Positions 23,550 to 40,238 are shown, counted from the whole stretch's first letter. The stretch is 63,533 bases of DNA, filler included, from Octopus bimaculoides (GCF_001194135.2; 6 parts of 6 records of this genome joined end to end with filler, not necessarily neighbours in it); one strand, 5' to 3'. Notes: generated by a model from the letters alone, not told the origin. Translations and numbers: made by a program.

Positions 23550-23590
<41 letters not shown>

Positions 23591-25136
23591 CATACTTACA
23601 TACATATACATATATGTGTTAAATCTCTCAGTGAGAGATATACAGTAACAATAGCGAATAGTAAAGTTTATTTGCCAACAGAATGTGGTGGTCCTATAAA
23701 GGACGATGTTACTGTTGTTTAAGCCCCAGGAAAACATCTTTTCCAGCTGGCTATCGACACACAGTATGTGTCCATGTAGTGTTTGCAAGGGAGGTCATCA
23801 CTCCCATCCCAGCCTTAGGTGATACTCACAGACCATGGTTTCTGGGTGGTTACAGTCATCAGTGTGAGACCAATCACTGGCTGTTGATGAAAGCTTTCTC
23901 CACTCGCAAACACTATATATTCTTTAAGCAGCACACAGTTGCTGATCTCGTATAGAGAAAAACAACCTGTGTTAAATTTCTCAGCAAGAGACATACAGTA
24001 GCAGTACTGAAGAGTAAAGTTTATTTGCCAATAGAATGTGGCAGTCCTATAAAAGATGATGCTACCATTGTTTAAGCTCATCATATATACATACATATAT
24101 ATNNNNNNNNNNNNNNNNNNNNNNNNNNNNNNNNNNNNNNNNNNNNNNNNNNNNNNNNNNNNNNNNNNNNNNNNNNNNNNNNNNNNNNNNNNNNNNNNNN
24201 NNNNNNNNNNNNNNNNNNNNNNNNNNNNNNNNNNNNNNNNNNNNNNNNNNNNNNNNNNNNNNNNNNNNNNNNNNNNNNNNNNNNNNNNNNNNNNNNNNNN
24301 NNNNNNNNNNNNNNNNNNNNATATATATATATATATATATACACATATATATATATATGTATATATATATGATGAGCTTCTTTCACTTCCTGGCTACTTG
24401 AATCCAAGTTACAAGGCTTTATTTGGTTCAGGGCTATAGTAGAAGATATTTGTGTTAGTTAATGAAAAAATATTGTGGAAGTCACTGAATCCTTTGTCAC
24501 TCCCAGACATGGAAATCCAGATTGTAGTCCCCACCATATTCAGTTTGCTAAGAATTTATTGACATATATTTTCTTCATTTTGATCCTAACATTACATTTA
24601 TCATCTTGCTGATCAGTGACAACATTTTGGTTATTTCACATGTCGCCTGCTCAGTATTCTCCAGAAAACTTTGGGAATGTATAGAGATTAGTTTATTTTA
24701 TACCTTGCTTGGAAGTTCTAAGCATTCTACATAATACCTAAGGGCTCTATACCATATCTGAGTTTCCCAGATTGGTCATGCTGTGAAAGTACACTGCAAG
24801 CAACTAACAGTGCTTTTTATAACTCAAAATTAAACAATAAACCAACACAAGTTTCAAGGCCACACTCCTCAGCTCCCAGCTACTGAAGTTACTAAAAGTA
24901 AATCCTCTTATGAACAATTAGTCTTGTCGGTCAGACTTACACTATGTAAATAATGTTACATTAATAATAGTTTGTTTACATTTTCCATTGGGAAATTTAC
25001 ACTTTGCAAGATCAGTAGCTGAGAACTGAAGTGAGCGGCCTTGACAAGCCTTAAGATAGTTGAAACATGTGCTGGTCGGTTCTTCAACTCCTAAATACCA
25101 AATATATTACAAGTACTGTTACCATCAACATTAATA

Positions 25137-25270
25137 GAGTAGCGTAGCCAAGGGTGGCTCTTGAATCTGCACCCCACAAGCCTATACAAGCTCATACAGT
25201 AGACCCCCAAAAGTGGCACTCCTATAAAAGCATCACCCAGATTGCCCCTAGTTCGCTAGCTATGCTACTC
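25137..25270. mobile_element. Small MITE-like element with 12-bp terminal inverted repeats
   Basis: gagtagcgtagc ... gctatgctactc (one mismatch). Target duplication not clear. Confidence 0.4.
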
Positions 25271-25369
25271 ATCAACACCAAGGCCAACATTTCACAGCTG
25301 GTGTTGATGATAATGATAATATAGATGATGATGATAATTAAAAAATTTTCTAAAATAAGCTCAAGGTTA

Positions 25370-27000
25370 TAAATTTAGGATGAAGGGTGGTGTTTAGTTT
25401 ATTACATTAACCCCCTACTTAACTTGTACTTTATTCTATTGTTCCTGATAAAAATGAAAGGCAAAATTGACCTTGATAGGATTTGAACTCAAATCATGAA
25501 GGGCTGGAACAAATACCTGAAGGCATTTTTCCTAATACTCTCATAATTCTGCCAATCCACTATCCTGATGATGATAATAATGGTTTCAAATTTTGGCACA
25601 AGGCCAGAAACTTCAGTAGTAAGTTGATTACACTAACCCCAGTGTTCAACTGGTAATTATTTTATTGACCTTGAAAGGATGAAATGCAAAGGTGACCTTG
25701 GCAGAATTTGAACTCAGAATGTACAAATGAATGAACAACCACTAAACATTTTGACCAGCATGCTAACAATTCTGCCAGCTCACTAGCTTATTCATGAAAA
25801 TGGATGAAATGCTGCTAAGCATTTGACCCAGTATGCCAATGATTCTGCCAGCTTGCTGCCTTATAATGATGCTAATAAACCTTTCTACTACAGGCGCAAA
25901 GCCTGAAATTTGGTGGAAGGGGTTAAATGATTACATCAACCCCAGTACTCAACTGGTACTTATTTTATTGACCCCCAAAAGGATAACAGGCAAAGTCAAC
26001 CCTGCATTTGAACTCAGAATGTATTGTCAGATGAAATACTGCTAAGCATTTCACTGGTGTGCTAATGATTCTACCAGCTCACCGCTTTTAATTTCAAATT
26101 TTGGCACAAGGCCGGAAATCTTTGGGAAGTGGGTAAGTCAATCACATCGACCCCAGTGTTCAGCTGGTACTTGTTTCATCAACCTCTGAAAGGGAGGAAA
26201 GGCAAAAGTTGACCATGACAAAATTTTAACTCAGAGCATGAAGACAGACAAAATGCTGTTAACCATTTTGCGTGGTGTGCAAGCACTCTTCCAGCTCACC
26301 ACCTTTATACTCATCTACTCTTTTACTCTTTTACTTGTTTCAGTCATTTGACTGTGGCCATGCTGGAACACCGCCTTTAGTCGAGCAAATCGACCCCAGG
26401 ACTTATTCTTTGTAAGCCTAGTACTTATTCTTTCGGTCTCTTTTGCCGAACCGCTAAGTTACGGGGACGTAAACACACCAGCATCGGTTGTCAAGCAATG
26501 TTGGAGGGACAAACACACACACATATACATATACATATATACGATGGGATTCTTTCAGTTTCCCTCTACCAAATCCACTCACAAGGCTTTGGTCGGCCCG
26601 AGGCTATAGTAGAAAATACTTGCCCAAGGTGCCACGCAGTGGGANNNNNNNNNNAGGCTATAGTAGAAAATACTTGCCCAAGGTGCCACGCAGTGGGAAT
26701 GAACCCAGAACCATGTGGTTGGTAAGCAAGCTACTTACCACACAACCACTCCGGCACCTATAATGATGATGATGATAATAACCCTTTCTATTATAGGCAC
26801 AAAGCCTGAAGTTTTGGGTGAGATGACTAGTCAATTACATCGATCCCAAAATTTCACTGGTACTTAATTTATCGACCCTGAATGATGAAAGGCAAAGTCA
26901 ACCGCAGCAGAATTTGAACTCAGAACATAGCAATGGGCAAAATACCACTAAGTATTTTGTCCAGCATGCTAACGACTCTGCCAGCTCACTGCCTTTATAA
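25370..27000 (-). mobile_element. Head-to-tail cluster of family A SINEs with one nested full-length family B SINE (26316-26760)
   Basis: Copies at ~25370-25565, 25590-25790, 25880-26088, 26100-26305 and 26790-26995, mostly separated by short AAT/GAT runs. A similar three-copy array lies at 35770-36460. Confidence 0.85.
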
Positions 27001-27100
27001 TGATGATAATAATGAGATATGAATGAAGATGATGATGAGGAGGAGGAAGAGTAAGAAGAACTTAGTAGATTGAATCATCATTTTCTTGTTTTTTTTTTAG

Positions 27101-27292
27101 GTATTTATGGTTTTGTGTCCAGTCACTATGGGACTTTTGGGCATTGTCCTCATCTACGGCCATGCTGTAGTCCCAACAGCTGAAAAAACCTTTAGTTATA
27201 TGTTCTTGGGATACTTTGACATCTCGAAAACTGAGGATGAAGTGAAGAATGAAGTTGGTCAAGCCATTAAAAATCATCTTGGAGATCCAAAG
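27101..27292 (+). CDS. SLC6: Divergent SLC6 (SNF/NSS) transporter, exon encoding TM5-EL3
   Basis: tttttttag|GTA...AAG|gtaagt, 192 nt, phase 0-0. VFMVLCPVTMGLLGIVLIYGHAVVPTAEKTFSYMFLGYFDISKTEDEVKNEVGQAIKNHLGDPK aligns to the SLC6 VVYFTATFPY...LPGA...L.DP exon with a ~19-aa insertion. Confidence 0.85.
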
Positions 27293-27999
27293 GTAAGTAA
27301 TTATATTTTTAAATTGTTTTCCTAAGTATGAATTTTTTTTTTTTTTTTTACCAAAATTTGCTTTTAACAATTTAGAAAATCTTTTTTATGCTTTTATAAC
27401 CTAGAATTTCACGGCTGGTCAAATTGATAAAATATATTTCCATTGACCATATGCCCTTTCACCAATGACCATGTGCTTTTCCCTACTTGGTGGTCACTGC
27501 ATCACCTATATCCCTATATTATTTACCTCTAATCCTCTGTTGCTTGCCTAACACTTTTGCAACCTTACCTTTTGTCCCTCAGCCCCTATCTCCCTCACCT
27601 GTTCCTCTATCCCAATTGCCTTCACATTCATCAACTCATCCTTTGAAGGTATGTCCTAACACCTCATCATCATCATCATCTTCTCTCCTTTCCTAGCTGG
27701 GACATCCCTGTATCTCCTCCACAGCAAGACATCTGTTCCTTTTCCTCTGTCATACCCTTACCTAACAAACCTGGCATTAAGCCATCTCCTTTGATATCCA
27801 CCCCAAATTCAATCAAGGAGTTTTGTTTTGCAAGATATTTGGCAACCTCAAGAGTGTTAGTAAACTATGTGTTATGATCAGCATAAGGATGAGCATTCAA
27901 TTTCAGAAATCATGCTAAGAAAGACATTGGTGCCACCGGCACGAGGGTCACAACAACAATTTCCATTTGATTTTAATTTGATTTGATTTGATTTTGATG

Positions 28000-29385
28000 T
28001 TGATGTTGATGTACTTGACTCAATAGGTCTCCTCAAGCACAGTATGTCGCCCTACGATCCAAGGTACTTTTGAGAGGGCTGGTCATGTGACACTGGTGTA
28101 GATTACAGCTGTGAACTAACTTTATTTGCTGGGTCTTCTCAGTCACAGCATATCTCCAGAGGTTTCGGTCTTTCATCATTGCCTCTGTGAAGCCCAACAT
28201 TTGAAGGTCATGCTTCACCACCTCATCCCATGTCTTCCTAGGTCTCCCTTTATCCCGGATTCTTTCCACTGTTTGGGAGTGGCACTTCTTCACACGGCTC
28301 TCCTCGTCCATCCACAGTACATGACCATACCAACACAAACATCTCTCTTGCATGCCACATCCAATGCTTCTTATGTCTAACATTTCTCCCAGGGTGCTTA
28401 CACTCAGTGTGCACACTGACATTACACATCCAGCGGATCATACTAGCTTCATTTCTTATTTCTTTATTGCCCACTAGGGGCTAAACATAGAGGGGACAAA
28501 CAAGGACAGACAAAGGTATTAAGTCGATTACATCAACTCCAGTGCATAACTGGTACTTAATTTATTGACCCCGAAAGGATGAAAGGCAAATCGACCTCAG
28601 CGGAATTTGAACTCAGAACGTAACGGCAGACGAAATACCACTAAGCATTTTGCCCAGCTTGCTAACGTTTCTGCCAGCTTGCTGCCTCATTTCTTTTGAG
28701 CCTACGCATGTCTTCAGCAGTCACGGCCCATATTTAACAGCCGTGAAGCATGGCAGTTCGCACACATGCATCATAAAACCTACCTTTCACTCTGAGCGAG
28801 AGGCTCTTTGTCACCAGTAGGGGTAGAAGCTTTCTGAACTTTGCCCCGGCTATTCTTATTCTAGTGGTAACACTCTCTCAGTATCAACCCTCACTACAGA
28901 CTTGGTCACCTAGGTAGCAGAAGCTATCAACTACTTCTAGTTTCTCACCATGGCATGTGATGAAATCTGTTTTCTGAGCATCTGTGGTATTTATTGCTCC
29001 TGTGCATCTGCTGCATACAAAAGCTACCTTCCTGGTTAATCTTCCTTTGATGTTGCTGCACCTCTTATGTGTCCATAGTTTACACTGGGTACATCTTATG
29101 GAGTTTCTACCTATACTTTTTCTACAGATCAAGCAAGGCCACCTACCTGAAGGGGTGTGTGATGTGTTCGCCTTCCTACTTACTAGAACTTTGGTCTTTG
29201 CAACATTGACTTTAAGGCCCTTCGATTCTAAACCTTGCTTCCACACTTGAAATTTCTTCTCTAGTTCTGGTAGTGATTCTGCTATGAGGGCCAGGTCATC
29301 AGCATAGAGGAGATCCCAGGGGCAACCTGCCTTGAACTCCTCTGTTATTGCCTGGAGGATTATGATGAATAACAGGGGACAGTGA
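28000..29385 (-). mobile_element. 5'-truncated RTE-type LINE with a PHD-like finger in the RT C-terminal part, split by a SINE at 28455-28687
   Basis: PLLFIIILQ...LLYADDLALI (RT), CLICRK..CTQCKLWTHKRC...FVCSRC, LEVVDSFCYLGD, and after the SINE RWMC...LCWYGHV...GRPRKTW..DRNLWR. Confidence 0.88.
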
Positions 29386-29584
29386 CTACCACTGCTGTTC
29401 CCACTGCCGCCACCACCACCACCACCATCACCCACAACCACTTCCCTCATATTGTGTTTCTTATGTGATGCATGTCTATATATATGACATGTCATCACTG
29501 AATGATAGTTTATGTTTTTCCTAACACTACATCAATTTTTTTTCAATAATATTTTCGTTTCGTTTTTTTCTTTTTTTTTTGCAG

Positions 29585-29691
29585 ACTTGGATGGATGCTC
29601 TTATAATGCATATCTATAGTATGGGTTTGTGGTCTGGAGTTGTTCCCATGCTGGGAAGTCATCTGCCAAACAAGAAAGTTTTACTCAACAC
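29585..29691 (+). CDS. SLC6: Divergent SLC6 transporter, exon encoding TM6-IL3
   Basis: ttttttgcag|ACT...AC|gtgagt, 107 nt, phase 0-2. TWMDALIMHIYSMGLWSGVVPMLGSHLPNKKVLLN vs family VW.DA.TQIFFS.GLG.G.L..LGSY. Confidence 0.9.
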
Positions 29692-29864
29692 GTGAGTATT
29701 CAACATTCAGTCACTATTTCTAATTTTCTTATGGGGAGATGCTATAAGATAATAATGTCATACATTCACTTAAATTTCTATGATTAAATACACTTGAGCC
29801 CAGCAATAAATGGGTGGCTGTTGTTGTTTAGCTTCATGTTAGCCCTGATTGAGTGGAGGCGCAA

Positions 29865-30465
29865 CGGCCCAGTAGTTAGGGCAGCGGACTCGCGGTCATA
29901 GGATCGCGGTTTCGATTCCCAGACTGGGTGTTGTGAGTGTTTATTGAGTGAAAACACTTAAAGCTCCTCAAGGCTCCAGCAGGGGATGGTGGCGAACCCT
30001 GCTGTACTCATTCACCACAACTTTCTCTCACTCTTTCTTCTTGTTTCTGTTGTGCCTGTAATTCAAAGGGCCAGCCTTGTCACACTGTGTCATGCTGAAT
30101 ATCCCCGAGAACTACGTTAAGGGTACACGTGTCTGTGGAGTGCTCAACCACTTGCACGTTAATTTCNNNNNNNNNNCACTTAAAGCTCCTCAAGGCTCCA
30201 GCAGGGGATGGTGGCGAACCCTGCTGTACTCATTCACCACAACTTTCTCTCACTCTTTCTTCTTGTTTCTGTTGTGCCTGTAATTCAAAGGGCCAGCCTT
30301 GTCACACTGTGTCATGCTGAATATCCCCGAGAACTACGTTAAGGGTACACGTGTCTGTGGAGTGCTCAACCACTTGCACGTTAATTTCATGAGCAGGCTG
30401 TTCGATTGATCAGATCAACTGGAACCCTCGACGTCGTAAGCGACGGAGTGCCAACAACAACAACA
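29865..30465 (+). mobile_element. tRNA-derived SINE, family C (resembles octopus OR-type); middle duplicated across a 10-N gap
   Basis: ggcccagtagttagggcagcggactcgcggtc...ggtttcgattccc head and gagtgcc(aac)n tail. Other copies at 37405-37785(-), 44345-44712(-), and a related one at 53195-53515(+). Confidence 0.85.
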
Positions 30466-30959
30466 AGCTCTGATTGAGCAGAATTATAATCAAAGGCATT
30501 CCACCTGTATCCATCCTGCCATTTTAGCAATGTTTAGGAATATGTTATCTATTATGTCCTTCCCTACTTTAAGACAATAAGGTGCAATCTAAGAGAAATT
30601 TAGCTGTTATTTCTCACAAGTTGAACAACCATAAAGTCTCCCTTATTCTGCTGGCACAAGTATAATTGTGGAGCACTGAAGCACTGTATAATTAATAAGT
30701 GTTTTGTTAGCATGCAATCATCATCATTGTTTAAGTTCATTCTTGGACCTGAGTAGATGATTGCGAACAGCTCCCGAGTCATCTGGCAACTTGCTGGAAT
30801 ATAAAAGGATGTTTTTTTAAGACATTGAATGAATATGGGGATCCAGTAAAGTAAAATAGGAATCAAAAGGGCCCATAGGCAAAAACTTGTTGAGAAACAC
30901 TGATCTATGGAAAGAACAACTTGCATTAACCTAATATAATACAGGTATTATTAAATAAA

Positions 30960-31400
30960 TTAATACGACAAGACAAGCGGTGTTATTGTATGGAGCTGAG
31001 ACATGGCGAACAACAGTTAAGTCAAATAAGAAAATACAATCATTCATCAACAAGTGCTTGCATAGTATACTTAAAACCAGATGGCCCGAACACATAAGCA
31101 ATATGGAGATATGGCAAAGAATGAATCGAGTTTTGATTAGAGAGCAAATATTTAAAAAAAAGTGGAAGTGGATTGGTAGCACAATTAGAAAGGACACACC
31201 AAATGCAGTGAAAAGTGCTTTACAGTGGAATCCGGATGGATATAGAAAGAGGGGTAGGCCTAAGAACTCGTGGCGTAGATCAACACAAAAGGAACTAGAG
31301 AAAGGGGGACATTCATGGCAGAGTATAAGTACAGAAGCGAGAAATTATGTGACATGGAATTCAATTATAAGTGGCCTATACTCCGCGTTGGAGGGTTAAA
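30960..31400 (+). mobile_element. RTE-type LINE 3' fragment
   Basis: LLYGAETW...CLHSILKTRW...ISN..KKWKWIG...ALQWNPDGYRKRGRPKNSWRR. Confidence 0.88.
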
Positions 31401-31903
31401 GGCAAGAAAGAAAGAAAGAATTATCAAATAAATACTGGTATTGTTAATTAACTTAATATAAAACCGCTATTGTTAAATAAAACACTGTAATTTGAGAAGT
31501 AATGATCCATTTTAAATACAGTAGATACTTTATGTTAATAGCAATTAGATTAACACAGATTAGTACAAATTCTCTTGTTTCTAGTTAAGACATTTTCTTT
31601 TATTTATTTATTTTTCTGGGTGTTAGTTGTTTGAGAGGTCTAATTGTTTGAGACATGCATAAGAGAGAGTTTACAGTAGGTAGTAAGAACTAACTAATTG
31701 GAATTCATCTTGTGATTGTGTAAATTTTGCAATATATGCATGAGAAAGAGATGTATAACACAGCACAAAAATAGTTACTTCTTTAATTAACCACACATAA
31801 CCATGTGAACAATTGCAAAGTTTCTATTATTGATTTAGATATCTGTATAAATATGTATATTTGAGATTCTTTCACAGCTCTTTGTATTGTATGTACTCCA
31901 CAG

Positions 31904-32028
31904 TGCATGGATGTTACTACTGTTAACATATGGACTTCTACCACATTGGCTTCTTGTAGCCATTGTTCCCTACATCAACCCTCAAGATATTGGTGGTGTG
32001 TTGTCCTCAACTTCAGGAATGAAACAAG
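31904..32028 (+). CDS. SLC6: Divergent SLC6 transporter, exon encoding TM7-EL4a
   Basis: tactccacag|T...CAAG|gtaaat, 125 nt, phase 2-1, open frame AWMLLLLTYGLLPHWLLVAIVPYINPQDIGGVLSSTSGMKQ. Length and phases match the homologous vertebrate SLC6 exon as I recall it (125 nt). Confidence 0.82.
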
Positions 32029-32095
32029 GTAAATATTGGTGTTGTTTGACATAAATATTTTACACCATAAATGTGTGTGTGTGTGTGTGTGTGTG

Positions 32096-32141
<46 letters not shown>

Positions 32142-34075
32142 CTTATCTTGACATCATGAGGTTGTGTCAAATGAATGTCGTTCATTTTCAATATTCTGTG
32201 AAACACATACCTGGCAATGGAAAGATATTACATTGCTTCAAAGCAGGTAAAAGCTGGTGACAGGAAGGGCATCCTGCCATAGAAAATCTGCTTCAATAAA
32301 CCCTATCAAATTTATGCAAGCAAGGAGGAAGTGGATATTAAAACGATGTTGATGATATTATTTTTATAAAGGAAAGATTACTTGAAAATCTTAGCTATGC
32401 AGCTTTCATTAAATTGTCCAATGAAAGCCACATAGCCTAAACTTCAAAATACTTTTAACCTTTTCCATGTACAAATATATTAAAAAGTATGTTGGTAGTC
32501 TCTTGTAGTCTAAGAAAGATGGTTCTGATAATTCATACTGAACAACCTGTGCAAATGATTTGTTTATAGTGATCAGGTGCTTGTATTGCACATTAGCTCA
32601 TTAGCTCACACCTGCCATCAAATTGATATTGCCTAAACAGGTGCACAGTGTACCTCACATCAGGTGTTAAAGTGATTGCAGAGCAACATGAGATTAAGTG
32701 CTTTGCTCAAGAACACAACACACTGCCTGTCCAGGAATTGAAATGATCTCACAGTCATGAGTGCAACACCCTAACCACTAGGTCTGGCACCCTCACACTA
32801 AAAATACACACACACACACATTAAATATGTTACTCTACAGAAAAGTATTGAGTGCTCCTTTAATGTTTGACTGTTTTTATATATGACTATACATAAAAAC
32901 AAACAATAAGCATAAAAACAAATATCACCATGGGACTTTAGAAGCATAACAGCATGATGATGGTCAGAATATCCTACTGTTTGTGGTATAAAGTTGGAAT
33001 ATAGCTTATGTAATACTGGAACCCCACAGCTGGAAGTTCAAGAGACAAATAGAAGGAAGAATCTGACATGTATGTGACAGGTATTATGTTAAAGTAATCT
33101 TGTCTTTGTGAAAAAGTTGTCAATTTCATGTCTAATTTATCAGTAAATTAACTATATGCCTGCCAAGAAACATGCTCTATAATTTGCCATTCATAAGTGT
33201 GGTCTCTTTACTTGCATGGTCTTCCACTGAGGTCTTAAATGTCCTTTAAGTATTTTATCTTAAAGGCTTACATATGATACATATGAAAAGTCTGGAAGTA
33301 TTTGTAATAAAAATGGGACATCTTTTCTTCATTACAAACTTCTAAAGTTATTTGTTATTCACAGTCAAGCTGAGAATATTAAAGACAAAAAAAAACTTCA
33401 ATTTATTAACAAAAACCCTTACAATTTGTCAGAAAGTATAGTAGGACAGTAGGTTATTGGTGAGCTTAGTAAATGCCCTGGTTTTGATTCTTGATTGTAA
33501 ACATTTCACTTATACAACTAACGCTCTTTTTCTAAAACATTCCTCATCTAAACCTGAGGCCTTTTTTTTTTTTGTGTATCTATGTAAAAACATCATTATG
33601 AGATTATATACTATTTGAGAAGATATCCAAGTAAATATATCATTTAAGAAAAACAACATGGGGTTTCTCTTTTCAGCCCCAGAGAATGTTGTTTTGAGAT
33701 TGGGTTTGACATATTCTGCCTAATGGTGTAGGGGCTGATGCTATGATAACCTGACATGAAGATCTCTCTGTTAGACAGTTTATACTGCTACACATTATGT
33801 GCTAGATTGAGCATAAAACACTGAAGCTGGCAACACCGTTTTAGTTAATGAAGTAACTTAGTGGGATATAATAGTTCTTGCAGGCATACATACTATAAAG
33901 TGTGCTGGTTTTAATTGGCATGTTATATGTAATATATTCATACAAAGATGCTGGCTCTCTGATAATATTTTATATTTTAGTTTTAAATGTTGTTTATTAT
34001 GTTTTAGGTAACTAAGTAAGCTTAAGTTCTGTTTTCAAATCTTGGATTTAGTGGTTATCACTATTAAAACTATAT

Positions 34076-34151
<76 letters not shown>

Positions 34152-34334
34152 TATAGTTCAAATTTATAGAAAAACAAAGACAAAGACAGGTGTTGGAACA
34201 ATAAGCAAGTGTATTAGTTTGATGCTTGGGAAAAATAGAAAAGTATTTTATGTTTCGAGCCTATGCTCTCTGACTGAAAGGAATTAGAGGAAATGAATAG
34301 AAAGAGAATGAAAAAAACGTGTTGATATATATCG

Positions 34335-34640
34335 TCATCATTTAACGTCCGTCGTCCATGCTGGCATGGGTTGGACAGTTTGACCAGGGCTGGCATGCTG
34401 GAAGGCTGCACCAGACTCCAGTCTGGTTTGGCATAGTTTCTATGGCTGGATGTCCTTCCTAACCCCAACCATTCTGAGAGTGTAATAGGTGCCTTTATGT
34501 GCCACCTGTATGAGTGCCATTTGCATGACACCAGTATCTGCTATGGCTACAATTTTACTTGACTTGATGGGTCTTCTTCTCAAGCACGGCATAATGCCAA
34601 AGGTTTCGGCCATTCGTCATTGCCTCTGTGAGGCCCAACA
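34335..34640 (-). mobile_element. RTE-type LINE terminal codons plus 3' UTR
   Basis: 34570-34640 is similar to the ORF end of the RTE at 28140-28200. A related 3' UTR lies at ~37130-37970(+), split by a family C SINE. Confidence 0.6.
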
Positions 34641-35205
34641 ATTGAAAAGTGCTTTTTACATGCTATCAGCACAGTTGGCAGTTACATGACACCAGCATCA
34701 GCCACAACCATGATATATATAGTTCTATATTTAAGAGATGAGGAATTATGTACATTATTTACATTCGATGGATATTTGTCCTCATCTAGTGGTTTAGAGT
34801 GCGGGCTACTATCCCAAGATTCCGAGTTCGATTCCAAGCAGTGACCTGAACAACAACAACAACAACAACAACAACAACCACATCGAAAAAAACTTTAGGA
34901 ATGAGAACCCAGGTTCGAAATTTTCCCCAAATTTCGGGCCTTGTGCCTAGAATAGAAAAGATTATATATACATAATCCTCATCATTTTACCTCTACTTTC
35001 CTTCCTAGAATGGCTTGGATGGGTTGTCATTGTAGTACAAGTCAGCTCTTATTCAGAATTACTGTCTTGTTGAGTGTGCTTAGGTGACCATGTCCCACTT
35101 GCAGTATGGCTGCAATCCAATGACTGAAATAAGTAAAAGGTAAAAATAAAAAAGATATATACACAGGAGCCTGTTTTTTTCTGAGTCAAGAACTATTAGA
35201 TGATT

Positions 35206-35247
<42 letters not shown>

Positions 35248-35291
35248 AGATGGGGGGGTGTATGTGTGTCTGTGTATGTGTGTGTGAGAGG

Positions 35292-35348
<57 letters not shown>

Positions 35349-36554
35349 GGAGAGAGTTTATTTGAGCCTGAATTTTTCTAAATTTATCACAAAAAACAGT
35401 CTGAGTTTCTTGGACCTGAAGTAGCTTTAATTTTGCATAAATTCATGTAGCTAGCCAATCAGAGAGCCTGTATGTGATTGTTTGCTTTACTAGAAATACA
35501 TCCAAATGTAATCCAAATACTCTCAGCTGTTTTTATTTTATTTAAAAAGAAAAACAAGACACATTGGATAATGCACTGTTTAACACTCTGTATATAAAGT
35601 ATAAAGAAGGAATGGTCACATTTTGATTGTCATTGATCATGGTTCCGTTTTACCCTTTTGATACCAACCCACCTAACTTTATGCTTTGCAATGATCTGAA
35701 TAAAACTTCCATCAAAATTTTATGATAATTTAAGTCCCAAACAACAGCTTAATAATGGTTTCAAATTTTGGCACAAGGCCAGTGAGTTTGAGGGAGAGAT
35801 TAAGTTGATTACATCGACCCAGTGCTCAACTGGTACTTAATTTTATCGGCCCCTGAAAGGATGAAAGGCAAAGTTGACCTCCGTGGTATTTGAACTCAGA
35901 ATGTAAAGATGGATGAAATACCATTAAGCATTTTGCCCAGCATGTTAATGATTCTGCCTGTTCGCCACCTTAATGATAATAATAATAATAATCCTTTCTA
36001 TTATAGGCTCAAGGCCTGGAATTTGGGGGGAGCGGAGTAGACGATCACATCGAACCCAGTACTCAACTAGTACATATTTTATCAACCATGAAAGGATAAA
36101 AGGCAAAGTCAGTCTCAGTGGAATTTGAACTCAGAATGTAAAGACAGACAAAATGCCATTTAGCATTTCTGCTGGCATGCTAATGATTCTGCCAGCTCAC
36201 TGCCTTAATAGTACTACTACTAATAATGATGATTATAATATAATAAAAGTTTAAAATTTTGGCACAACACCAGCAATTGTTGGGGAGGTAGTAAGTCAAT
36301 TATATCGATTCCAGTGCTCAACTGGTACTTATTTTATCAACCTTGAAAAGATGAAAGGCAAAGTCAACCTCAGCAAAATTTGAACTCAGAATATAAAGAA
36401 GGACAGAATGCCGCTAAGCACTTTGCTCAGCATGGTAATAATTCTGTCAGCTTGCCACTTTACACCAGCTTAATAATGAAAGTTATCTTACTAAATTCTT
36501 CATCGTATTCCAATGTAATTTGAATATGATGAAAGTAATTGAAAGGCAGTGAGT

Positions 36555-37070
36555 GTCAGTTGTTGTTGTTGGCTGCGTCTCGTGTTTCCGAGCTTGCAAT
36601 CCAGTTCATTTTCCTGGGTGTTTGAACCACAGATGGCTCCACAATCCAAGGGTTGCATGAAACATGCGGGGACATTGTGGACAAGAGATAGAAGGGGTTG
36701 GTTTGGGAAGGAGAAGGCGCTGCTTTCTCTCCCGTCTCTTGAGTTCAGCTCATGTGACTTGGGCTTTCTTAAAGTCCGCTGAACCTGTTTTGATGGTGTG
36801 TTTACCGAGATATCCTCTCAGTGTGCGGGGTCAATGTTGGTGCTTTTCAAGGCTGATTTGAGTTGGTTCTTGTACCGCCTCAAGGGGGCTCCATGAGGAC
36901 GTTTTCCTTCAGACAGTTCACCGTAGAGACAGATCTTGGGAAAGCGATGTTCATTCATCCGACGGATGTGACCTGACCATCGGAGACGATGTTCAATGAT
37001 CAAAGCTTCGATGCTCAAGAGACCTGATCTTTCAAGCACAGAGTTATTGGTGATGTGATCTTCCCAGTTG
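36555..37070 (-). mobile_element. RTE-type LINE 3' end with C-terminal C2H2 finger and (AAC)n tail
   Basis: LLSIEALII..RLRWSGHIRRM...ICLYGELSEGKRPHGAPLRRYKNQLK...CPQCPRMF...LWSH; ends gcc(aac)4. Confidence 0.85.
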
Positions 37071-38002
37071 ATGTTCAGGATAGAGTGAAGTTTGGATTGA
37101 TTGGATTGAGTGTCAGTAGAAATATGGTAACAAAGGGGCTAGTAAAATCGCTGCCTTCCATACATACAGGCTTGTCCTTTCAGGAGCCAGTGCTACATAA
37201 GTATCACCTGTACCAGTGCTGTGTAAACCCACCTTTGCCAGTGCTGTGTGAATGTACCTATGCGGTGCTGTGTAAAAATCATCTGTGCCAGTGCTGTATA
37301 AACACACCCATGCTGGTGTTGTGTAAATACACCCATGCTGGTGTTGTGTAATGATCACCTGTGCTGGTGCTAGCGTAAAAACACCTATGCCGGTGGCATG
37401 TTGTTGTTGGCACTCCGTCGCTTACGATGTCAAGGGTTCCAGTTGATCTGATCAATGGAACAGCCTGCTCGTGAAATTAACGTGCAAGTGGCTGAGCACT
37501 CCATAGATACGTGTACCCTTAACGTAGTTCTTGGGGATATTCAGCGTGACACAGTGTGACAAGGCTGACCCTTTGAATTACAGGCACAACAGAAACAGGA
37601 AGTAAGAGTGAGAGAAAGTTGTGGTGAAAGAGTACAGCAGAGTTCACCACCATCTCCTGCCAGAGCCTCGTGGAGCTTTATGTGTTTTCGCTCAATAAAT
37701 ACTCACAACGCCGGTCTGGGAATCAAAACTGCGACCCTATGACCGCGAGTCCGCTGCCCTAACCACTGGGCCATTGTGCCTCCACCCGGTGGCATGTAAA
37801 AAGCACCCAACACACTCTATTAAGTAGTTGGCATTAGGAAGGGCATCCAGTCATAGAACCCATGTCACAAAAGACGATTAGAATCTGGACAGCTCCCAGC
37901 TGGCCAGCTCCGTATCAAACTGTCCAATCCATGCCAGCATGGAAAGCAGATGTTAAACAATGATGATGAAATAACACGTGATAATTTCCCTTCTCTTTGC
38001 AG

Positions 38003-38115
38003 GTCTTCCCGTGTTACTGGTATCGGTTGCCAATACATTCTCTCAATACAATTTATCTCCAGTTATTGCTTCGATGGTCTATCTGTCTTTTTTCTTACTG
38101 GCACTGCTTCATCAG
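38003..38115 (+). CDS. SLC6: Divergent SLC6 transporter, exon encoding EL4b-TM8
   Basis: cttctctttgcag|GT...CAG|gtaggt, 113 nt, phase 1-0. GLPVLLVSVANTFSQYNLSPVIASMVYLSFFLLALLHQ aligns without gaps to GPGLAF.AYP.A.TQLP.SPLWA.LFF.ML..LG.DSQ, ending at the same conserved Q/intron. Confidence 0.9.
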
Positions 38116-38329
38116 GTAGGTTTATTTCAACAATCACATCAAAGGAGAAAACACTTTTTATACAACAGTGTGTAGCCTTGCTAACTCTTTTAATTAGGCA
38201 GAGTGTGTATGACAAAAACACATTGTTTAACACTTGCATATATGCACAAATACACATACAAACATACACACAGAAATAAACTACAAATACATTTATGTAT
38301 TGATACATGCATGCGCGCGTGCGGGCACA

Positions 38330-38365
<36 letters not shown>

Positions 38366-38749
38366 CATACACATACTAAATGCATGAAACTCTCAGGCTT
38401 TGAGTCACTCTGTTAGTTGAACTAAATATTAATAAAAATATACAGTCATATTTTTAGTTCTATTTTTCCTGTTCACATCAATACACCTAGTAGATAAAGC
38501 AATTAAGATTATGAAGCCAGGAAATGCTCCCGGCCCATCAGGAATCACTGGGACAACTGAAGAACATCAATAGAGAAATCAGTGTGTATGACAAAAACAC
38601 ATTGTTTAACACTTGCATATATGCACAAATACACATACAAACATACACACATATTTTTTTCATGCTAGCATCACTATTAAGGTCATGATAACTTGCACAC
38701 CTACAAATACATTTATGTATTGATACATGCATGCGCGCGTGCGGGCACA

Positions 38750-38791
<42 letters not shown>

Positions 38792-39892
38792 CATACACAT
38801 ACTAAATGCATGAAACTCTCACTATTGATGTTCTTCAGTTTGTATGTGTATTTGTGCATATATGCAAGTGTTAAACAATGTGTTTTTGTCATACACACTG
38901 ATTTCTCTATTGATGTTCTTCAGTTGTACCAGGGTCTCTGGTTTGTTGATGTAAACTCTCATTTTTCATATGTGATGTGGTGGTGTTGCAAAATCTGTCG
39001 AATGTAAATAATGTACATAATTCCTCGTCTCTTACATATAGAACTGTACTAGTCTGGGAACTTTTTGATACTGTCTCATACAGTGTGCACTGGATATTTT
39101 TTTCATGCTAGCATCACTATTAAGGTCATGATAACTTGCACACCTACAAAACTTGAGGGGTTTTATACTAGCAGATAAGGATTAAGGTATGAGAGAAGGG
39201 AGTGAATCAGAGCAGGTCCTAGCTGTAGGGATGCTACATTGCTACCCACATTCAGGAGAGAGTTAGAAATGGATCAGTTGTAGCTGCAATGGGATAAATA
39301 ATGGTGATGAGTTGTCCAATATTCTTGTTAAGTGCCATCCCTGAGTTCAAATAACACCAGCATTTACTTTCACTTTCATTCTCCTAACCATGTGTCTATG
39401 AAAATGGAAGCGGTATAATAAATGATGAATTCAATTGACTATGTACCTACACTACAAAATTGTAGCCTTGTGTTAAAATTATCTATCATTGTAATTTTAA
39501 TGGGGGTTTTTTTCCAATAAAAATATTTTGAACCTTCAAGTGAAACCTTTGTACCAAGAGCCTCTATGTAGAGGAGTTTCTGTACAGGTAATTACTAAAT
39601 GTGATAAGTTAGAATCCGCTGCTGTATATGGCTATTGCATTATCTTTTATGGAAATAAAGAATCCATTTCAGATTTCATGAGATAATTCAGAAAGCAGAT
39701 GGAAAGGAAGATAATAAATAATGACTAAAATAAAATAAAATAAAAACAAGAACAATGAATGTATAGTTATACATGAATGAGTGTGTATGCATGTGTATAT
39801 GTGTGTATGTGTACACATTAAATGTTAATATAGGGACGTATTCATATGCACACACACACACACACACACATATATGTATATATACATACATA

Positions 39893-40238
39893 CAGGGTGT
39901 CCCAAAAATCACTGATGGGTTTCAATTTCTAATAACTTCCTTAAATTTACAGATAAAAGCATGAAATTTTGATACAATATAAAGGACATAATGGAAATTA
40001 ATAGGCACAAGTCAAATTTTGCAACACCACTACATCACATATGAAAAATGACATCTCTTAAATGTCAGCCATTTTCAGCTTCACACAACCATGCTCTTTC
40101 CAAAACTTGCACCATAACACCCTCAAGAGTTTCAGACTCCACTTCTCTGATTTCTCTATTGATGTTCTTCAGTTGTACCAGGGTCTCTGGTTTGTTGATG
40201 TAAACTCTCATTTTTCATATGTGATGTGGTGGTGTTGC
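39893..40238 (-). mobile_element. Tc1/mariner-type element 3' end with TIR
   Basis: TA|cagggtgtcccaaaaa TIR. The reverse strand reads ..LERAWLCEAENG.HLRDVIFHM*, like the RA.LC..NG.H.E C-terminus of Tc1/mariner transposases. Confidence 0.6.

What the first reader, a model, noticed from the sequence alone, without database searches (positions are those of the whole stretch)
27101..38115. SLC6-family gene with intact splicing but lost ion-coupling residues: candidate uncoupled carrier, transceptor or accessory subunit
Seen: four exons splice into one stop-free frame with canonical sites and family-typical phases (0,0,2,1,0), so the gene looks maintained. By-eye alignment to GAT1 (numbering from memory): TM6 Q291 (Cl-) to Met and G299 to Trp, with S295 kept; TM7 N327 (Na1) to Thr and S331 (Cl-) to Leu, with a Pro in the helix; TM8 D395/S396 (Na2) to Leu/His; the EL4 GPGLAF motif becomes GLPVLL. 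A-to-I recoding cannot restore these codons (ATG, ACA, CTT, CAT). Inference: not a conventional Na+/Cl- symporter, and possibly a cephalopod or mollusc lineage of non-canonical SLC6 proteins.
Basis: partly seen in the sequence, partly recalled or inferred. Interest (0 to 1): 0.75.

Follow-up and report, generated by a model that had tools for sequence, protein, structure and literature searches.

The report
Octopus SLC6-like transporter without sodium sites
These are four real, conserved exons of an Octopus bimaculoides gene from a small mollusc-and-ribbon-worm branch of the sodium-coupled neurotransmitter/amino-acid transporter family; the whole branch has replaced the residues that normally bind sodium and chloride, so its database names ("taurine transporter", "GABA transporter-like") probably mislead.

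Summary
Four exons (27101-27292, 29585-29691, 31904-32028, 38003-38115) join through AG/GT sites into one 179-codon frame, phases 0,0,2,1,0. The assembly gap lies in intron 2 between two identical 212-nt copies and touches no coding sequence. The 179 residues match residues 101-279 of O. bimaculoides XP_014777554.1 exactly. They are coding exons 6-9 of a 14-exon gene.

The gene is alive. Exon lengths and splice sites are the same in O. sinensis and Argonauta, dN/dS is 0.08-0.09, and cuttlefish-type mRNA contigs carry the uninterrupted ORF.

The fragment alone matches neither Pfam SNF nor any solved structure. Its full-length relatives do: SNF down to 7e-43, all solved SLC6 structures at 1e-38 to 1e-46, predicted-fold TM-score 0.65-0.76, and 10 of 13 introns shared with a canonical SLC6 gene.

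About 30 proteins from gastropods, bivalves, cephalopods and one nemertean form a discrete branch, equally far from every characterised subfamily. Across it N66 is Gly, Q291 is Leu/Met/Ile, D395/S396 are His/Leu/Gln plus His (Lys in the nemertean), R69 is mostly Ser and D451 Asn/Arg; S295 is mostly kept.

Function is inferred: most likely a Na+/Cl--independent carrier.

The parts
27101..27292 (+). Coding exon 6 of 14 (192 nt, phase 0 to 0). Encodes the end of TM5 and extracellular loop 3 (VFMVLCPV...HLGDPK).
   Evidence: AG/GT with an 89% polypyrimidine tract and a 7/7 donor. 100% tblastn match to XP_014777554.1 residues 101-164. Same length and splice sites in O. sinensis and Argonauta. Both of its boundaries coincide in position and phase with a canonical fish SLC6 gene.
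29585..29691 (+). Coding exon 7 (107 nt, phase 0 to 2). Encodes TM6 with the unwound segment: TWMDALIMHIYSMGLWSGVVPMLGSH. Holds Met at the GAT1 Q291 position (29606-8), the family-invariant His at the I292 position (29609-11), the kept Ser295 (29618-20) and the invariant Trp at the G299 position (29630-2).
   Evidence: This is the most conserved segment of the family: W, H, G-L-W and G are invariant.
31904..32028 (+). Coding exon 8 (125 nt, phase 2 to 1). Encodes TM7 and most of extracellular loop 4 (AWMLLLLTYGLLPHW...SGMKQ). Uses the acceptor AG at 31902-3. An upstream AG at 31876-7 would run into a stop.
   Evidence: The junction LLN-T|AWM is present in the RefSeq proteins and in the spliced mRNA. 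There is no Asn at or near the GAT1 N327 position in any register.
38003..38115 (+). Coding exon 9 (113 nt, phase 1 to 0). Encodes the end of loop 4 and the first half of TM8 (GLPVLLVSVANTF...LSP...FFLLALLHQ). Leu (38107-9) and His (38110-12) sit at the GAT1 D395/S396 (Na2) positions.
   Evidence: The His at the S396 position is present in 20 of 21 family members and is Lys in the nemertean.
30167..30176 (.). Assembly gap in intron 2, between two identical 212-nt copies (29955-30166 and 30177-30388) of a repeat. It is not part of the coding sequence.
   Evidence: The repeat insertion is absent from the orthologous O. sinensis intron.

Best explanation
Shown. The finding is coding exons 6-9 (end of TM5 to the middle of TM8) of the 14-exon Octopus bimaculoides gene annotated as XP_014777554.1, 'sodium- and chloride-dependent taurine transporter'. 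The gene is intact, under strong purifying selection, and its cephalopod orthologue is transcribed and spliced. It belongs to a discrete, single-copy branch of the SLC6/NSS family found in gastropods, bivalves, cephalopods and a nemertean. The branch keeps the 12-helix LeuT/SLC6 fold, the glycine-rich unwound parts of TM1 and TM6, and most SLC6 intron positions. The branch as a whole has replaced four of the five side chains that bind Na1 and Na2, most of the chloride site, and both partners of the extracellular gate salt bridge.

Inferred. It cannot couple transport to Na+ and Cl- in the canonical way. It most likely still works as an alternating-access carrier for a small polar solute that is independent of Na+/Cl-. 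In this reading the conserved basic or protonatable side chain at the Na2 serine position (His in molluscs, Lys in the nemertean) stands in for the sodium ion, as Lys158 does in the Na+-independent LeuT-fold transporter ApcT. The other invariant core histidines (at the GAT1 I292 and T400 positions) possibly make it proton-coupled. The substrate is unknown. The database names (taurine, GABA, proline, XTRP3, B0+) are best-hit labels, not evidence of substrate.
For: Identity: exact 179/179 match to XP_014777554.1. The piece is collinear with the O. sinensis locus at about 90-92% identity in introns and 96.5-99% in exons. Both octopod loci have 14 coding exons.

Maintained: exon lengths 192/107/125/113 and AG/GT sites are identical in three octopods. 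Nei-Gojobori dN/dS is 0.078 (against O. sinensis, dS 0.094) and 0.092 (against Argonauta, dS 0.65). Amino-acid identity to a cuttlefish-type orthologue is 80% while synonymous sites are saturated.

Expressed: six Logan contigs of 2.6 kb from different runs carry the uninterrupted 623-aa ORF, and a sister sequence was seen on 104 contigs. Oyster and clam members are likewise on 2-3 kb contigs.

SLC6 ancestry: PF00209 hits on full-length members at 6e-32 to 7e-43. The family profile hits 76 distinct PDB SLC6 sequences; the 60 listed score 8e-46 to 5e-38. AlphaFold2 model of the Argonauta protein: pLDDT 72.6, pTM 0.74. Foldseek target-normalised TM-score 0.65-0.76 to TauT, PROT, DAT, SERT, GlyT and GAT1. 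Ten of 13 introns coincide in position and phase with a fish canonical SLC6 gene.

Lost sites, counted over 21 family members: N66 to Gly in 16; Q291 to Leu/Met/Ile in 20; D395 to His/Leu/Gln/Val; S396 to His in 20 and Lys in 1; R69 to Ser in 15; D451 to Asn/Arg in 19; E101 to Gln in 20; G59 deleted; S295 kept in 15. No Asn in TM7 in any register.

Carrier machinery kept: G63, G297 and G301 are invariant or nearly so, and the TM5 Pro is present. The strongest conservation lies in TM2, TM6, TM8 and TM10 rather than on the surface.
Against: No functional datum exists for any member. The ion-site reading rests on sequence alignment at 20-23% identity. TM7 is ambiguous by one or two residues. I could not inspect model coordinates, so the idea that the histidines face the core follows only from their alignment to LeuT/GAT1 positions.

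Much of the Na2 coordination in canonical members comes from backbone carbonyls, which sequence cannot rule out. A remodelled Na+ site is therefore possible.

No transcript of the O. bimaculoides gene itself was recovered. All three Octopus gene models are defective at one end. The window shows only 179 of about 620 residues.
Confidence: 0.55

Rival explanations
1. It is still a Na+-coupled (possibly Cl--independent) symporter. It would use a rebuilt ion site: backbone carbonyls plus new side chains such as the kept Ser295, the TM1 Thr/Ser at the A61 position, or the TM7 Tyr.
For: S295, Y60, G63, and the carbonyl-donating positions I62 (Val) and L392 (Phe/Leu) are retained or conservatively replaced. 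The fold and hinge glycines are intact. Every characterised NSS member is Na+-coupled (established knowledge).
Against: N66, N327, D395 and S396 are all replaced throughout the branch. G59 is deleted from the unwound part of TM1 that builds Na2. A His or Lys sits where the Na2 serine should be, which would repel a cation if charged.
Confidence: 0.2
2. It no longer transports. It would act as a ligand sensor (transceptor) or as an accessory or chaperone subunit for another membrane protein, localised through its conserved cytoplasmic tail.
For: Both gate salt-bridge partners (R69, D451) and the coupling Glu101 are lost. The C-terminal tail carries a conserved ...E-T-G-D-T... motif and a hydrophobic terminus (-ADV, -VRV, -ARV, -VKV, -VPL) that resembles a PDZ ligand.
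Against: Conservation is strongest in the unwound TM6 segment and in the core faces of TM2, TM8 and TM10, the parts that bind substrate and move during transport. The hinge glycines and prolines are also kept. A pure scaffold would not need them.
Confidence: 0.15
3. It is a decaying or unexpressed SLC6 pseudogene, and that is why the ion sites are gone.
For: The fragment alone fails Pfam SNF and PDB searches. The RefSeq models in Octopus are incomplete or fused.
Against: dN/dS is 0.08-0.09. All eight splice sites and all four exon lengths are conserved in three octopods. Synonymous sites are saturated while 80% of residues are kept against a decapodiform orthologue. Full-length spliced mRNAs exist. 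The same substitutions are fixed across Mollusca and a nemertean.
Confidence: 0.01
4. The four open segments are chance ORFs in repeat-rich DNA, and the SLC6 resemblance is imagined.
For: No significant hit for the fragment in the first three searches. The pairwise Smith-Waterman score to GAT1/GAT3 is only z = 5-6 and covers TM6 only.
Against: Exact match to an annotated protein. Hits at 3e-39 to 6e-17 to full-length SNF-domain proteins. These are the only strong splice-flanked open segments in the piece.
Confidence: 0.01

Closest known systems
Canonical metazoan SLC6/NSS transporters (GAT1/SLC6A1, TauT/SLC6A6, PROT/SLC6A7, B0AT1, XTRP3/SIT1, GlyT, DAT, SERT)
   Same: Common ancestry: Pfam SNF hits on full-length members, and profile hits to every solved member. 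Twelve-helix LeuT fold with target-normalised TM-score 0.65-0.76. Ten of 13 intron positions and phases shared. Unwound TM1 and TM6 with conserved Gly. Conserved W285, D287, A288, S295, G297, G301 and the L-S-P of EL4/TM8.
   Different: Only 20-23% identity. It is equally distant from all subfamilies (134-160 bits, against 515-685 bits among canonical members). Side-chain ligands of Na1 (N66, N327) and Na2 (D395, S396) are replaced, as are the chloride ligands (Q291, often Y86, and S331 depending on register). The R69-D451 gate pair and E101 are also replaced. There is no EL2 cysteine pair. The family has its own invariant residues (His at I292, Trp at G299, His at S396 and T400, Lys in TM2).
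The transporters it is named after in databases: taurine transporter (O. bimaculoides, Argonauta), GABA transporter 1-like (O. sinensis), XTRP3-like (O. vulgaris, Haliotis), B(0+)-like, proline transporter-like
   Same: Same superfamily and fold. These are simply the best BLAST hits at annotation time.
   Different: Orthologues of one gene carry at least six different names. No subfamily is measurably closer than another. The substrate-site residues of GAT1/TauT (G65, Y140, T400) are not kept.
Na+-independent LeuT-fold carriers with a built-in cation at the Na2 position (ApcT Lys158 and related APC-family transporters; from my own knowledge, not tested here)
   Same: A basic or protonatable side chain (His in 20 of 21 members, Lys in Lineus) occupies the position of a Na2 ligand, while the other Na+ ligands are absent. 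This is the functional analogy I propose.
   Different: It is a different family (APC versus NSS). In ApcT the residue comes from TM5, here from TM8. His is not Lys. There is no structural or functional evidence here.
Orphan or atypical SLC6 members (vertebrate NTT5/SLC6A16, insect blot and inebriated, nematode SNF paralogues; from my own knowledge)
   Same: SLC6 members without an established substrate.
   Different: None appeared among the hits of the fragment in the search of 1.84 billion representatives, where only mollusc, nemertean and unnamed fragment sequences reached E of 0.001 or better. I did not compare their ion-site residues here.

Membership tests
SLC6 / NSS (Pfam PF00209 SNF) | Significant match to the family profile | tested here: met
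   The window fragment alone gives no hit at E up to 10. Its full-length relatives hit PF00209 above the gathering score: Lineus 147.6 bits, Haliotis 111.4, Mya 110.7. The fragment hits those proteins at 3e-39 to 6e-17. Precomputed PF00209 is on record for the Octopus and Argonauta orthologues.
SLC6 / NSS (Pfam PF00209 SNF) | Twelve-helix LeuT-type fold | tested here: met
   AlphaFold2 model of the Argonauta orthologue: pLDDT 72.6, pTM 0.74. The top 50 Foldseek PDB hits are all SLC6 transporters, with target-normalised TM-score 0.65-0.76 over about 565 columns.
SLC6 / NSS (Pfam PF00209 SNF) | Shared gene structure with canonical members | tested here: met
   Ten of 13 Argonauta introns match a fish SLC6 gene in position and phase. 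Of the window's five boundaries, three match and two do not (E2/E3 and the E4 donor). Only one canonical comparator was used.
SLC6 / NSS (Pfam PF00209 SNF) | Na1 side-chain ligands (GAT1 N66, S295, N327; LeuT N27, T254, N286) | tested here: not met
   N66 is Gly in 16 of 21 members, including the cephalopods. S295 is kept. N327 aligns with Thr, Tyr or an insertion depending on register and is never Asn. N66 lies outside the window and was read from orthologues.
SLC6 / NSS (Pfam PF00209 SNF) | Na2 ligands (GAT1 G59, I62, L392 carbonyls; D395, S396 side chains) | tested here: not met
   D395 is Leu in Octopus (His/Leu/Gln/Val in the family). S396 is His in 20 of 21 members and Lys in 1. G59 is deleted. 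The carbonyl donors cannot be judged from sequence.
SLC6 / NSS (Pfam PF00209 SNF) | Chloride site of eukaryotic members (GAT1 Y86, Q291, S295, S331) | tested here: not met
   In Octopus the residues are Phe, Met, Ser, and Gly/Pro/Leu depending on register. The family has Leu/Met/Ile at Q291 in 20 of 21 members. No acidic residue replaces S331 as it does in bacterial homologues.
SLC6 / NSS (Pfam PF00209 SNF) | Extracellular gate salt bridge (GAT1 R69-D451) | tested here: not met
   R69 is Ser in 15 of 21 members. D451 is Asn in 13 and Arg in 6. Both positions lie outside the window and were read from orthologues.
SLC6 / NSS (Pfam PF00209 SNF) | Na+- (and Cl--) dependent substrate uptake | not testable with these tools
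   Needs expression and flux or current assays.
Taurine transporter (SLC6A6) or GABA transporter 1 (SLC6A1), as annotated | Specific orthology: closer to that subfamily than to others, with substrate-site residues kept | tested here: not met
   The family profile scores TauT 146.9, GAT1 147.7, PROT 159.7, B0AT1 154 and SERT 136 bits, with no preference. GAT1 scores 661 bits to TauT. G65, Y140 and T400 are not kept. No tree was built.
Na+-independent LeuT-fold carriers with an intrinsic cation at Na2 (ApcT type); functional analogy only | Basic side chain occupying the Na2 site | tested here: inconclusive
   His or Lys aligns with the Na2 serine in all 21 members. Its position in space could not be checked, because the tools return no model coordinates.

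The most novel reading that the evidence does not exclude
This mollusc and nemertean branch would be the first NSS/SLC6 lineage that has given up Na+ and Cl- coupling altogether. A built-in basic residue (His or Lys at the Na2 serine) would replace the sodium ion. A histidine-lined core (at the GAT1 positions I292, S396 and T400, and in many members G65 and Y140) would make it either a proton-coupled carrier or a transporter or sensor for a transition metal such as Zn2+ or Cu2+. The precedent is NRAMP, which uses the same LeuT fold for metals.
Probability: 0.3. Interest if true: 0.8.

Novelty: new variant of a known kind. Interest (0 to 1): 0.55.

Why it matters
The NSS/SLC6 family is defined by sodium coupling. 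A branch that has been conserved since before molluscs and nemerteans split, yet lacks the Na1, Na2 and Cl- ligands and carries His/Lys at Na2, is a natural experiment. It shows how a LeuT-fold symporter can change its energy coupling, and it makes the question testable with one cDNA in oocytes.

There is also a practical side. The gene carries at least six different substrate names in public databases. Cephalopod and mollusc cell atlases use SLC6 names as markers of transmitter identity; for example, slc6a15/18 serves as a glutamatergic marker in PMC9815951. Reading this gene as a GABA or taurine transporter would therefore probably be wrong.

Tried and rejected
- First exon-3 model. Using the first AG (31876-7) gave a stop in the required frame. 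The AG at 31902-3 replaced it.
- Pfam scan of the fragment: nothing, even at E up to 10.
- phmmer of the fragment against PDB sequences: nothing.
- Word-indexed protein search with the fragment: no hit at E up to 1, although an exact match exists in that collection. That was a false negative of the index.
- Search of 50%-identity representatives. It returned Haliotis as the best hit at 43% and no cephalopod protein, so that library is not complete for this family.
- Third homologue search with the 21-sequence alignment.
- My exact spliced mapper failed on the Haliotis locus. Only tblastn boundaries are available there, and they agree with the Octopus junctions.
- ARAGORN found no tRNA-like gene in the repeats I had taken for tRNA-derived SINEs.
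- Literature: six full-text searches and two papers read found no description of this branch. An SLC6 tree of O. bimaculoides exists (bioRxiv 10.1101/301192) but comments only on SERT.
Bit-score comparison was used instead.
- Pseudogene and chance-ORF readings were rejected (see the rival explanations).

Full report
**1. What is in the sequence**

The piece (23550-40238) is AT-rich, repeat-laden animal DNA. Four open segments are each preceded by a polypyrimidine tract plus AG and followed by a GT donor:
- E1: 27101-27292
- E2: 29585-29691
- E3: 31904-32028
- E4: 38003-38115

My first model of exon 3 used the nearest upstream AG (31876-7) and ran into a stop. The acceptor that works is 'tccacag' at 31902-3.

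I scanned both strands of the 16.7-kb piece for open segments of at least 90 nt with a strong acceptor and donor. Only three candidates came out, namely E1, E2 and E4, and none lay on the minus strand. The pattern is therefore not chance.

**2. The assembly gap**

The gap at 30167-30176 lies in intron 2. The 212 nt on its left (29955-30166) are identical to the 212 nt on its right (30177-30388). It is an unmerged overlap inside a repeat. No reading frame crosses it. The orthologous O. sinensis intron lacks the whole insertion.

**3. Identity**

The fragment found nothing in three searches: Pfam, the word-indexed protein search and PDB sequences.

An exhaustive HMMER search of 1.84 billion representatives then gave 12 hits. 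The best was a 613-aa Haliotis protein at 3e-39 and 43% identity, covering the whole query. The named hits were all molluscan, plus one nemertean (Lineus).

A profile search with an alignment of these hits found cephalopod members. Their cluster mates include O. bimaculoides XP_014777554.1, which contains the window's 179 residues exactly, at positions 101-279.

The piece is collinear with the O. sinensis gene locus, at about 90-92% identity in introns and 96.5-99% in exons. Both octopod loci I fetched have 14 coding exons. The window holds exons 6-9 and no others.

**4. Is it alive?**

- Exon lengths (192, 107, 125, 113) and all eight AG/GT sites are identical in O. bimaculoides, O. sinensis and Argonauta hians.
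- Nei-Gojobori dN/dS over the 537 nt is 0.078 against O. sinensis (dS 0.094) and 0.092 against Argonauta (dS 0.65).
- Against a cuttlefish-type orthologue, synonymous sites are saturated (pS 0.83) while 80% of residues are kept.
- That orthologue sits as an uninterrupted 623-codon ORF on 2.6-kb contigs from several sequencing runs, and a sister sequence was seen on 104 contigs. With the gene spanning 57-98 kb in octopods, these are spliced mRNAs. They read straight across the three junctions.
- The window's sequence keeps every column that is invariant in the family alignment.

The pseudogene reading is rejected.

**5. Is it SLC6?**

Yes, by four independent lines, none of which works on the fragment alone.
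- Full-length members pass Pfam SNF.
- A five-sequence family profile hits 76 distinct PDB SLC6 sequences over all twelve helices. The 60 listed score 8e-46 to 5e-38.
- An AlphaFold2 model of the complete Argonauta protein (pLDDT 72.6, pTM 0.74) superposes on TauT, PROT, DAT, SERT, GlyT and GAT1 with target-normalised TM-score 0.65-0.76 at 20-23% identity.
- Ten of the 13 Argonauta introns coincide in position and phase with those of a canonical fish SLC6 gene.

Of the window's five exon boundaries, three are shared with that fish gene: the E1 acceptor, E1/E2 and E3/E4. The E2/E3 boundary and the E4 donor are not shared. 'Family-typical phases' is therefore only partly right, on a single comparator.

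**6. A separate branch**

The family profile scores 134-160 bits against every characterised subfamily, with no preference. GAT1 scores 515-685 bits against the other canonical eukaryotic members.

In the profile search, scores drop from 579 bits for the weakest full family member to 137 bits for the best canonical SLC6. Nothing full-length lies in between; the two remaining hits below that are short fragments at 55-59% identity.

Each species shows one copy. Orthologues carry at least six different automatic names: taurine, GAT1-like, GAT3-like, XTRP3-like, B(0+)-like and proline transporter-like. I did not build a tree.

**7. The ion sites**

GAT1 recalled from memory was verified as identical to 7y7v_A over residues 1-599, so its numbering is native. 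I aligned it to a 21-member family HMM.

| GAT1 position | Role | Family (21 members) |
|---|---|---|
| G59 | Na2 carbonyl, TM1 | deleted |
| N66 | Na1, TM1 | Gly 16 |
| R69 | extracellular gate, TM1 | Ser 15 |
| Y86 | Cl-, TM2 | Phe 11, Tyr 7 |
| E101 | coupling Glu, TM2 | Gln 20 |
| Q291 | Cl-, TM6 | Leu 14, Met 3, Ile 3 (Octopus Met) |
| I292 | TM6 | His 21 |
| S295 | Na1/Cl-, TM6 | kept, Ser 15 |
| G299 | TM6 | Trp 21 |
| D395 | Na2, TM8 | His 9, Leu 6, Gln 4 (Octopus Leu) |
| S396 | Na2, TM8 | His 20, Lys 1 (Lineus) |
| T400 | substrate site, TM8 | His 19 |
| D451 | extracellular gate, TM10 | Asn 13, Arg 6 |

TM7 is uncertain by one or two residues.
- The profile alignment to GAT3, and the register anchored on the shared phase-1 intron, give Tyr and Pro.
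- hmmalign treats N327 as an insertion and pairs S331 with Gly.

No register gives Asn. None gives Ser in Octopus, though seven other members have Ser in one register.

In EL4 the family has KPGLSF, so the PGL core of GPGLAF is kept by sequence and Octopus differs only by Pro to Gln. I cannot decide between the two.

The remark that A-to-I editing cannot restore the canonical residues follows from the genetic code for the codons present: ATG, TAT or ACA, CCA or CTA, CTT and CAT.

**8. How it most likely works (inferred)**

The features an alternating-access carrier needs are kept: the fold, the unwound Gly-rich parts of TM1 and TM6, and the TM5 proline. The strongest conservation is in TM2, TM6, TM8 and TM10, that is, in the core. 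This favours a protein that still binds something in the centre and still moves.

With four of five Na+-binding side chains gone, most of the chloride site gone and the gate salt bridge gone, canonical Na+/Cl- symport is unlikely. The column aligned with the Na2 serine is always basic or protonatable: His in molluscs, Lys in the nemertean.

In Na+-independent LeuT-fold carriers such as ApcT, a lysine amine sits where Na2 would be (my knowledge, not tested here). I therefore favour a Na+/Cl--independent carrier with an intrinsic cation at Na2, possibly proton-coupled through the invariant histidines. My overall confidence in the full statement, identity plus this mechanism, is about 0.55.

The rivals are:
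- a rebuilt Na+ site (0.2)
- a non-transporting sensor or accessory role (0.15)
- within the main reading, a metal-handling variant suggested by the histidine-lined core

The substrate is unknown.

**9. Novelty and limits**

The gene and its relatives are already in public databases as automatic predictions. I found no paper describing the branch or its missing ion sites.

It is a new variant of a known kind, not a new kind.

Limits:
- There are no functional data.
- The window covers only 179 of about 620 residues.
- TM1, TM2 and TM10 sites were read from orthologues, because all three Octopus models are defective. The O. bimaculoides model starts in TM3, the O. sinensis model lacks TM1, and the O. 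vulgaris model is fused to a downstream gene.
- Model coordinates could not be inspected.
- The taxonomic range is only as good as the searches, two of which demonstrably missed true members.

Noticed in passing
window 30177-30462 and 37399-37684: A 286-nt inverted repeat, 93% complementary (a second overlapping pair runs 29927-30166 / 37473-37712). It is made by two copies of the same repeat in introns 2 and 3, so the arms flank exon 3 (125 nt, not a multiple of three). In the pre-mRNA they could pair into a long double strand, which would be a possible ADAR substrate or a driver of exon-3 skipping or circularisation. Both insertions are absent from the orthologous O. sinensis introns, so the arrangement is lineage-specific.
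   Followed up: partly
window 26645-26654: A second 10-N gap is also flanked by identical copies (26601-26644 equals 26655-26698, 44 nt). It looks like the same kind of unmerged-overlap artefact as the gap in intron 2. A 218-N gap at 24103-24320 sits inside (AT)n/(TATG)n simple sequence.
   Followed up: partly
window 28884-29498 (-), 30980-31399 (+), 28033-28422 (-), 36818-37039 (-): Retroelement debris in the introns. The 204-aa ORF at 28884-29498 matches Pfam RVT_1 (9.5e-08) followed by a PHD finger. The other three ORFs look like C-terminal parts of LINE-type ORF2 by eye but had no Pfam hit.
   Followed up: partly
window 25580-26300, 26780-27000, 28440-28690, 35750-36480: Many copies of one short interspersed repeat ('...tttcaaattttggcacaaggcc...gaatttgaactcagaa...') in both introns and the upstream flank. 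ARAGORN sees no tRNA-like structure in the piece.
   Followed up: no
window 34788-37914: Intron 3 carries about 3.1 kb where O. sinensis has about 0.2 kb (L002 49510-49705). The extra DNA is repeats and microsatellites, (GT)n/(GA)n at 35210-35350.
   Followed up: partly
window 38190-38480 and 38564-38778 (inverted piece 38838-38916); also 38900-38990 and 40150-40238: There is a local duplication just downstream of exon 9: two window segments match the same O. sinensis stretch (L002 49939-50215), and one further piece is inverted. A roughly 90-nt motif at 38900-38990 recurs at the very end of the piece. Exon 10 is 1 kb downstream in O. sinensis but is not within the piece.
   Followed up: partly
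window 31876-31877: A decoy AG lies 26 nt upstream of the real exon-8 acceptor. It is preceded by a fair pyrimidine tract, and using it would add 26 nt and hit a stop codon. An automatic gene finder or an aberrant splice could pick it.
   Followed up: yes
orthologues P0062, P0053, P0061 (not in the window): All three Octopus gene models are defective. O. bimaculoides XP_014777554.1 starts inside TM3. O. sinensis XP_029658307.2 has an unrelated N-terminus and lacks TM1. O. vulgaris CAI9717206.1 has the correct N-terminus but is fused at its 3' end to about 215 residues of another protein. Argonauta and the cuttlefish-type transcripts give the complete 621-623 aa protein.
   Followed up: partly
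family proteins, C-terminal tail (not in the window): The otherwise variable cytoplasmic tail holds a conserved acidic motif ...(D/E)S(L/V)ETGDT.... It ends in a hydrophobic residue after a conserved (K/T)xEVEV stretch (-ADV, -VRV, -ARV, -VKV, -VPL), which looks like a PDZ-type ligand.
   Followed up: no
Lineus longissimus P0008, TM8 (not in the window): The nemertean member has Lys where the molluscs have the near-invariant His, at the position of the Na2 serine (GAT1 S396). It has Val where they have the second TM8 His. The His-to-Lys exchange is the observation that suggested the 'built-in cation' idea.
   Followed up: partly
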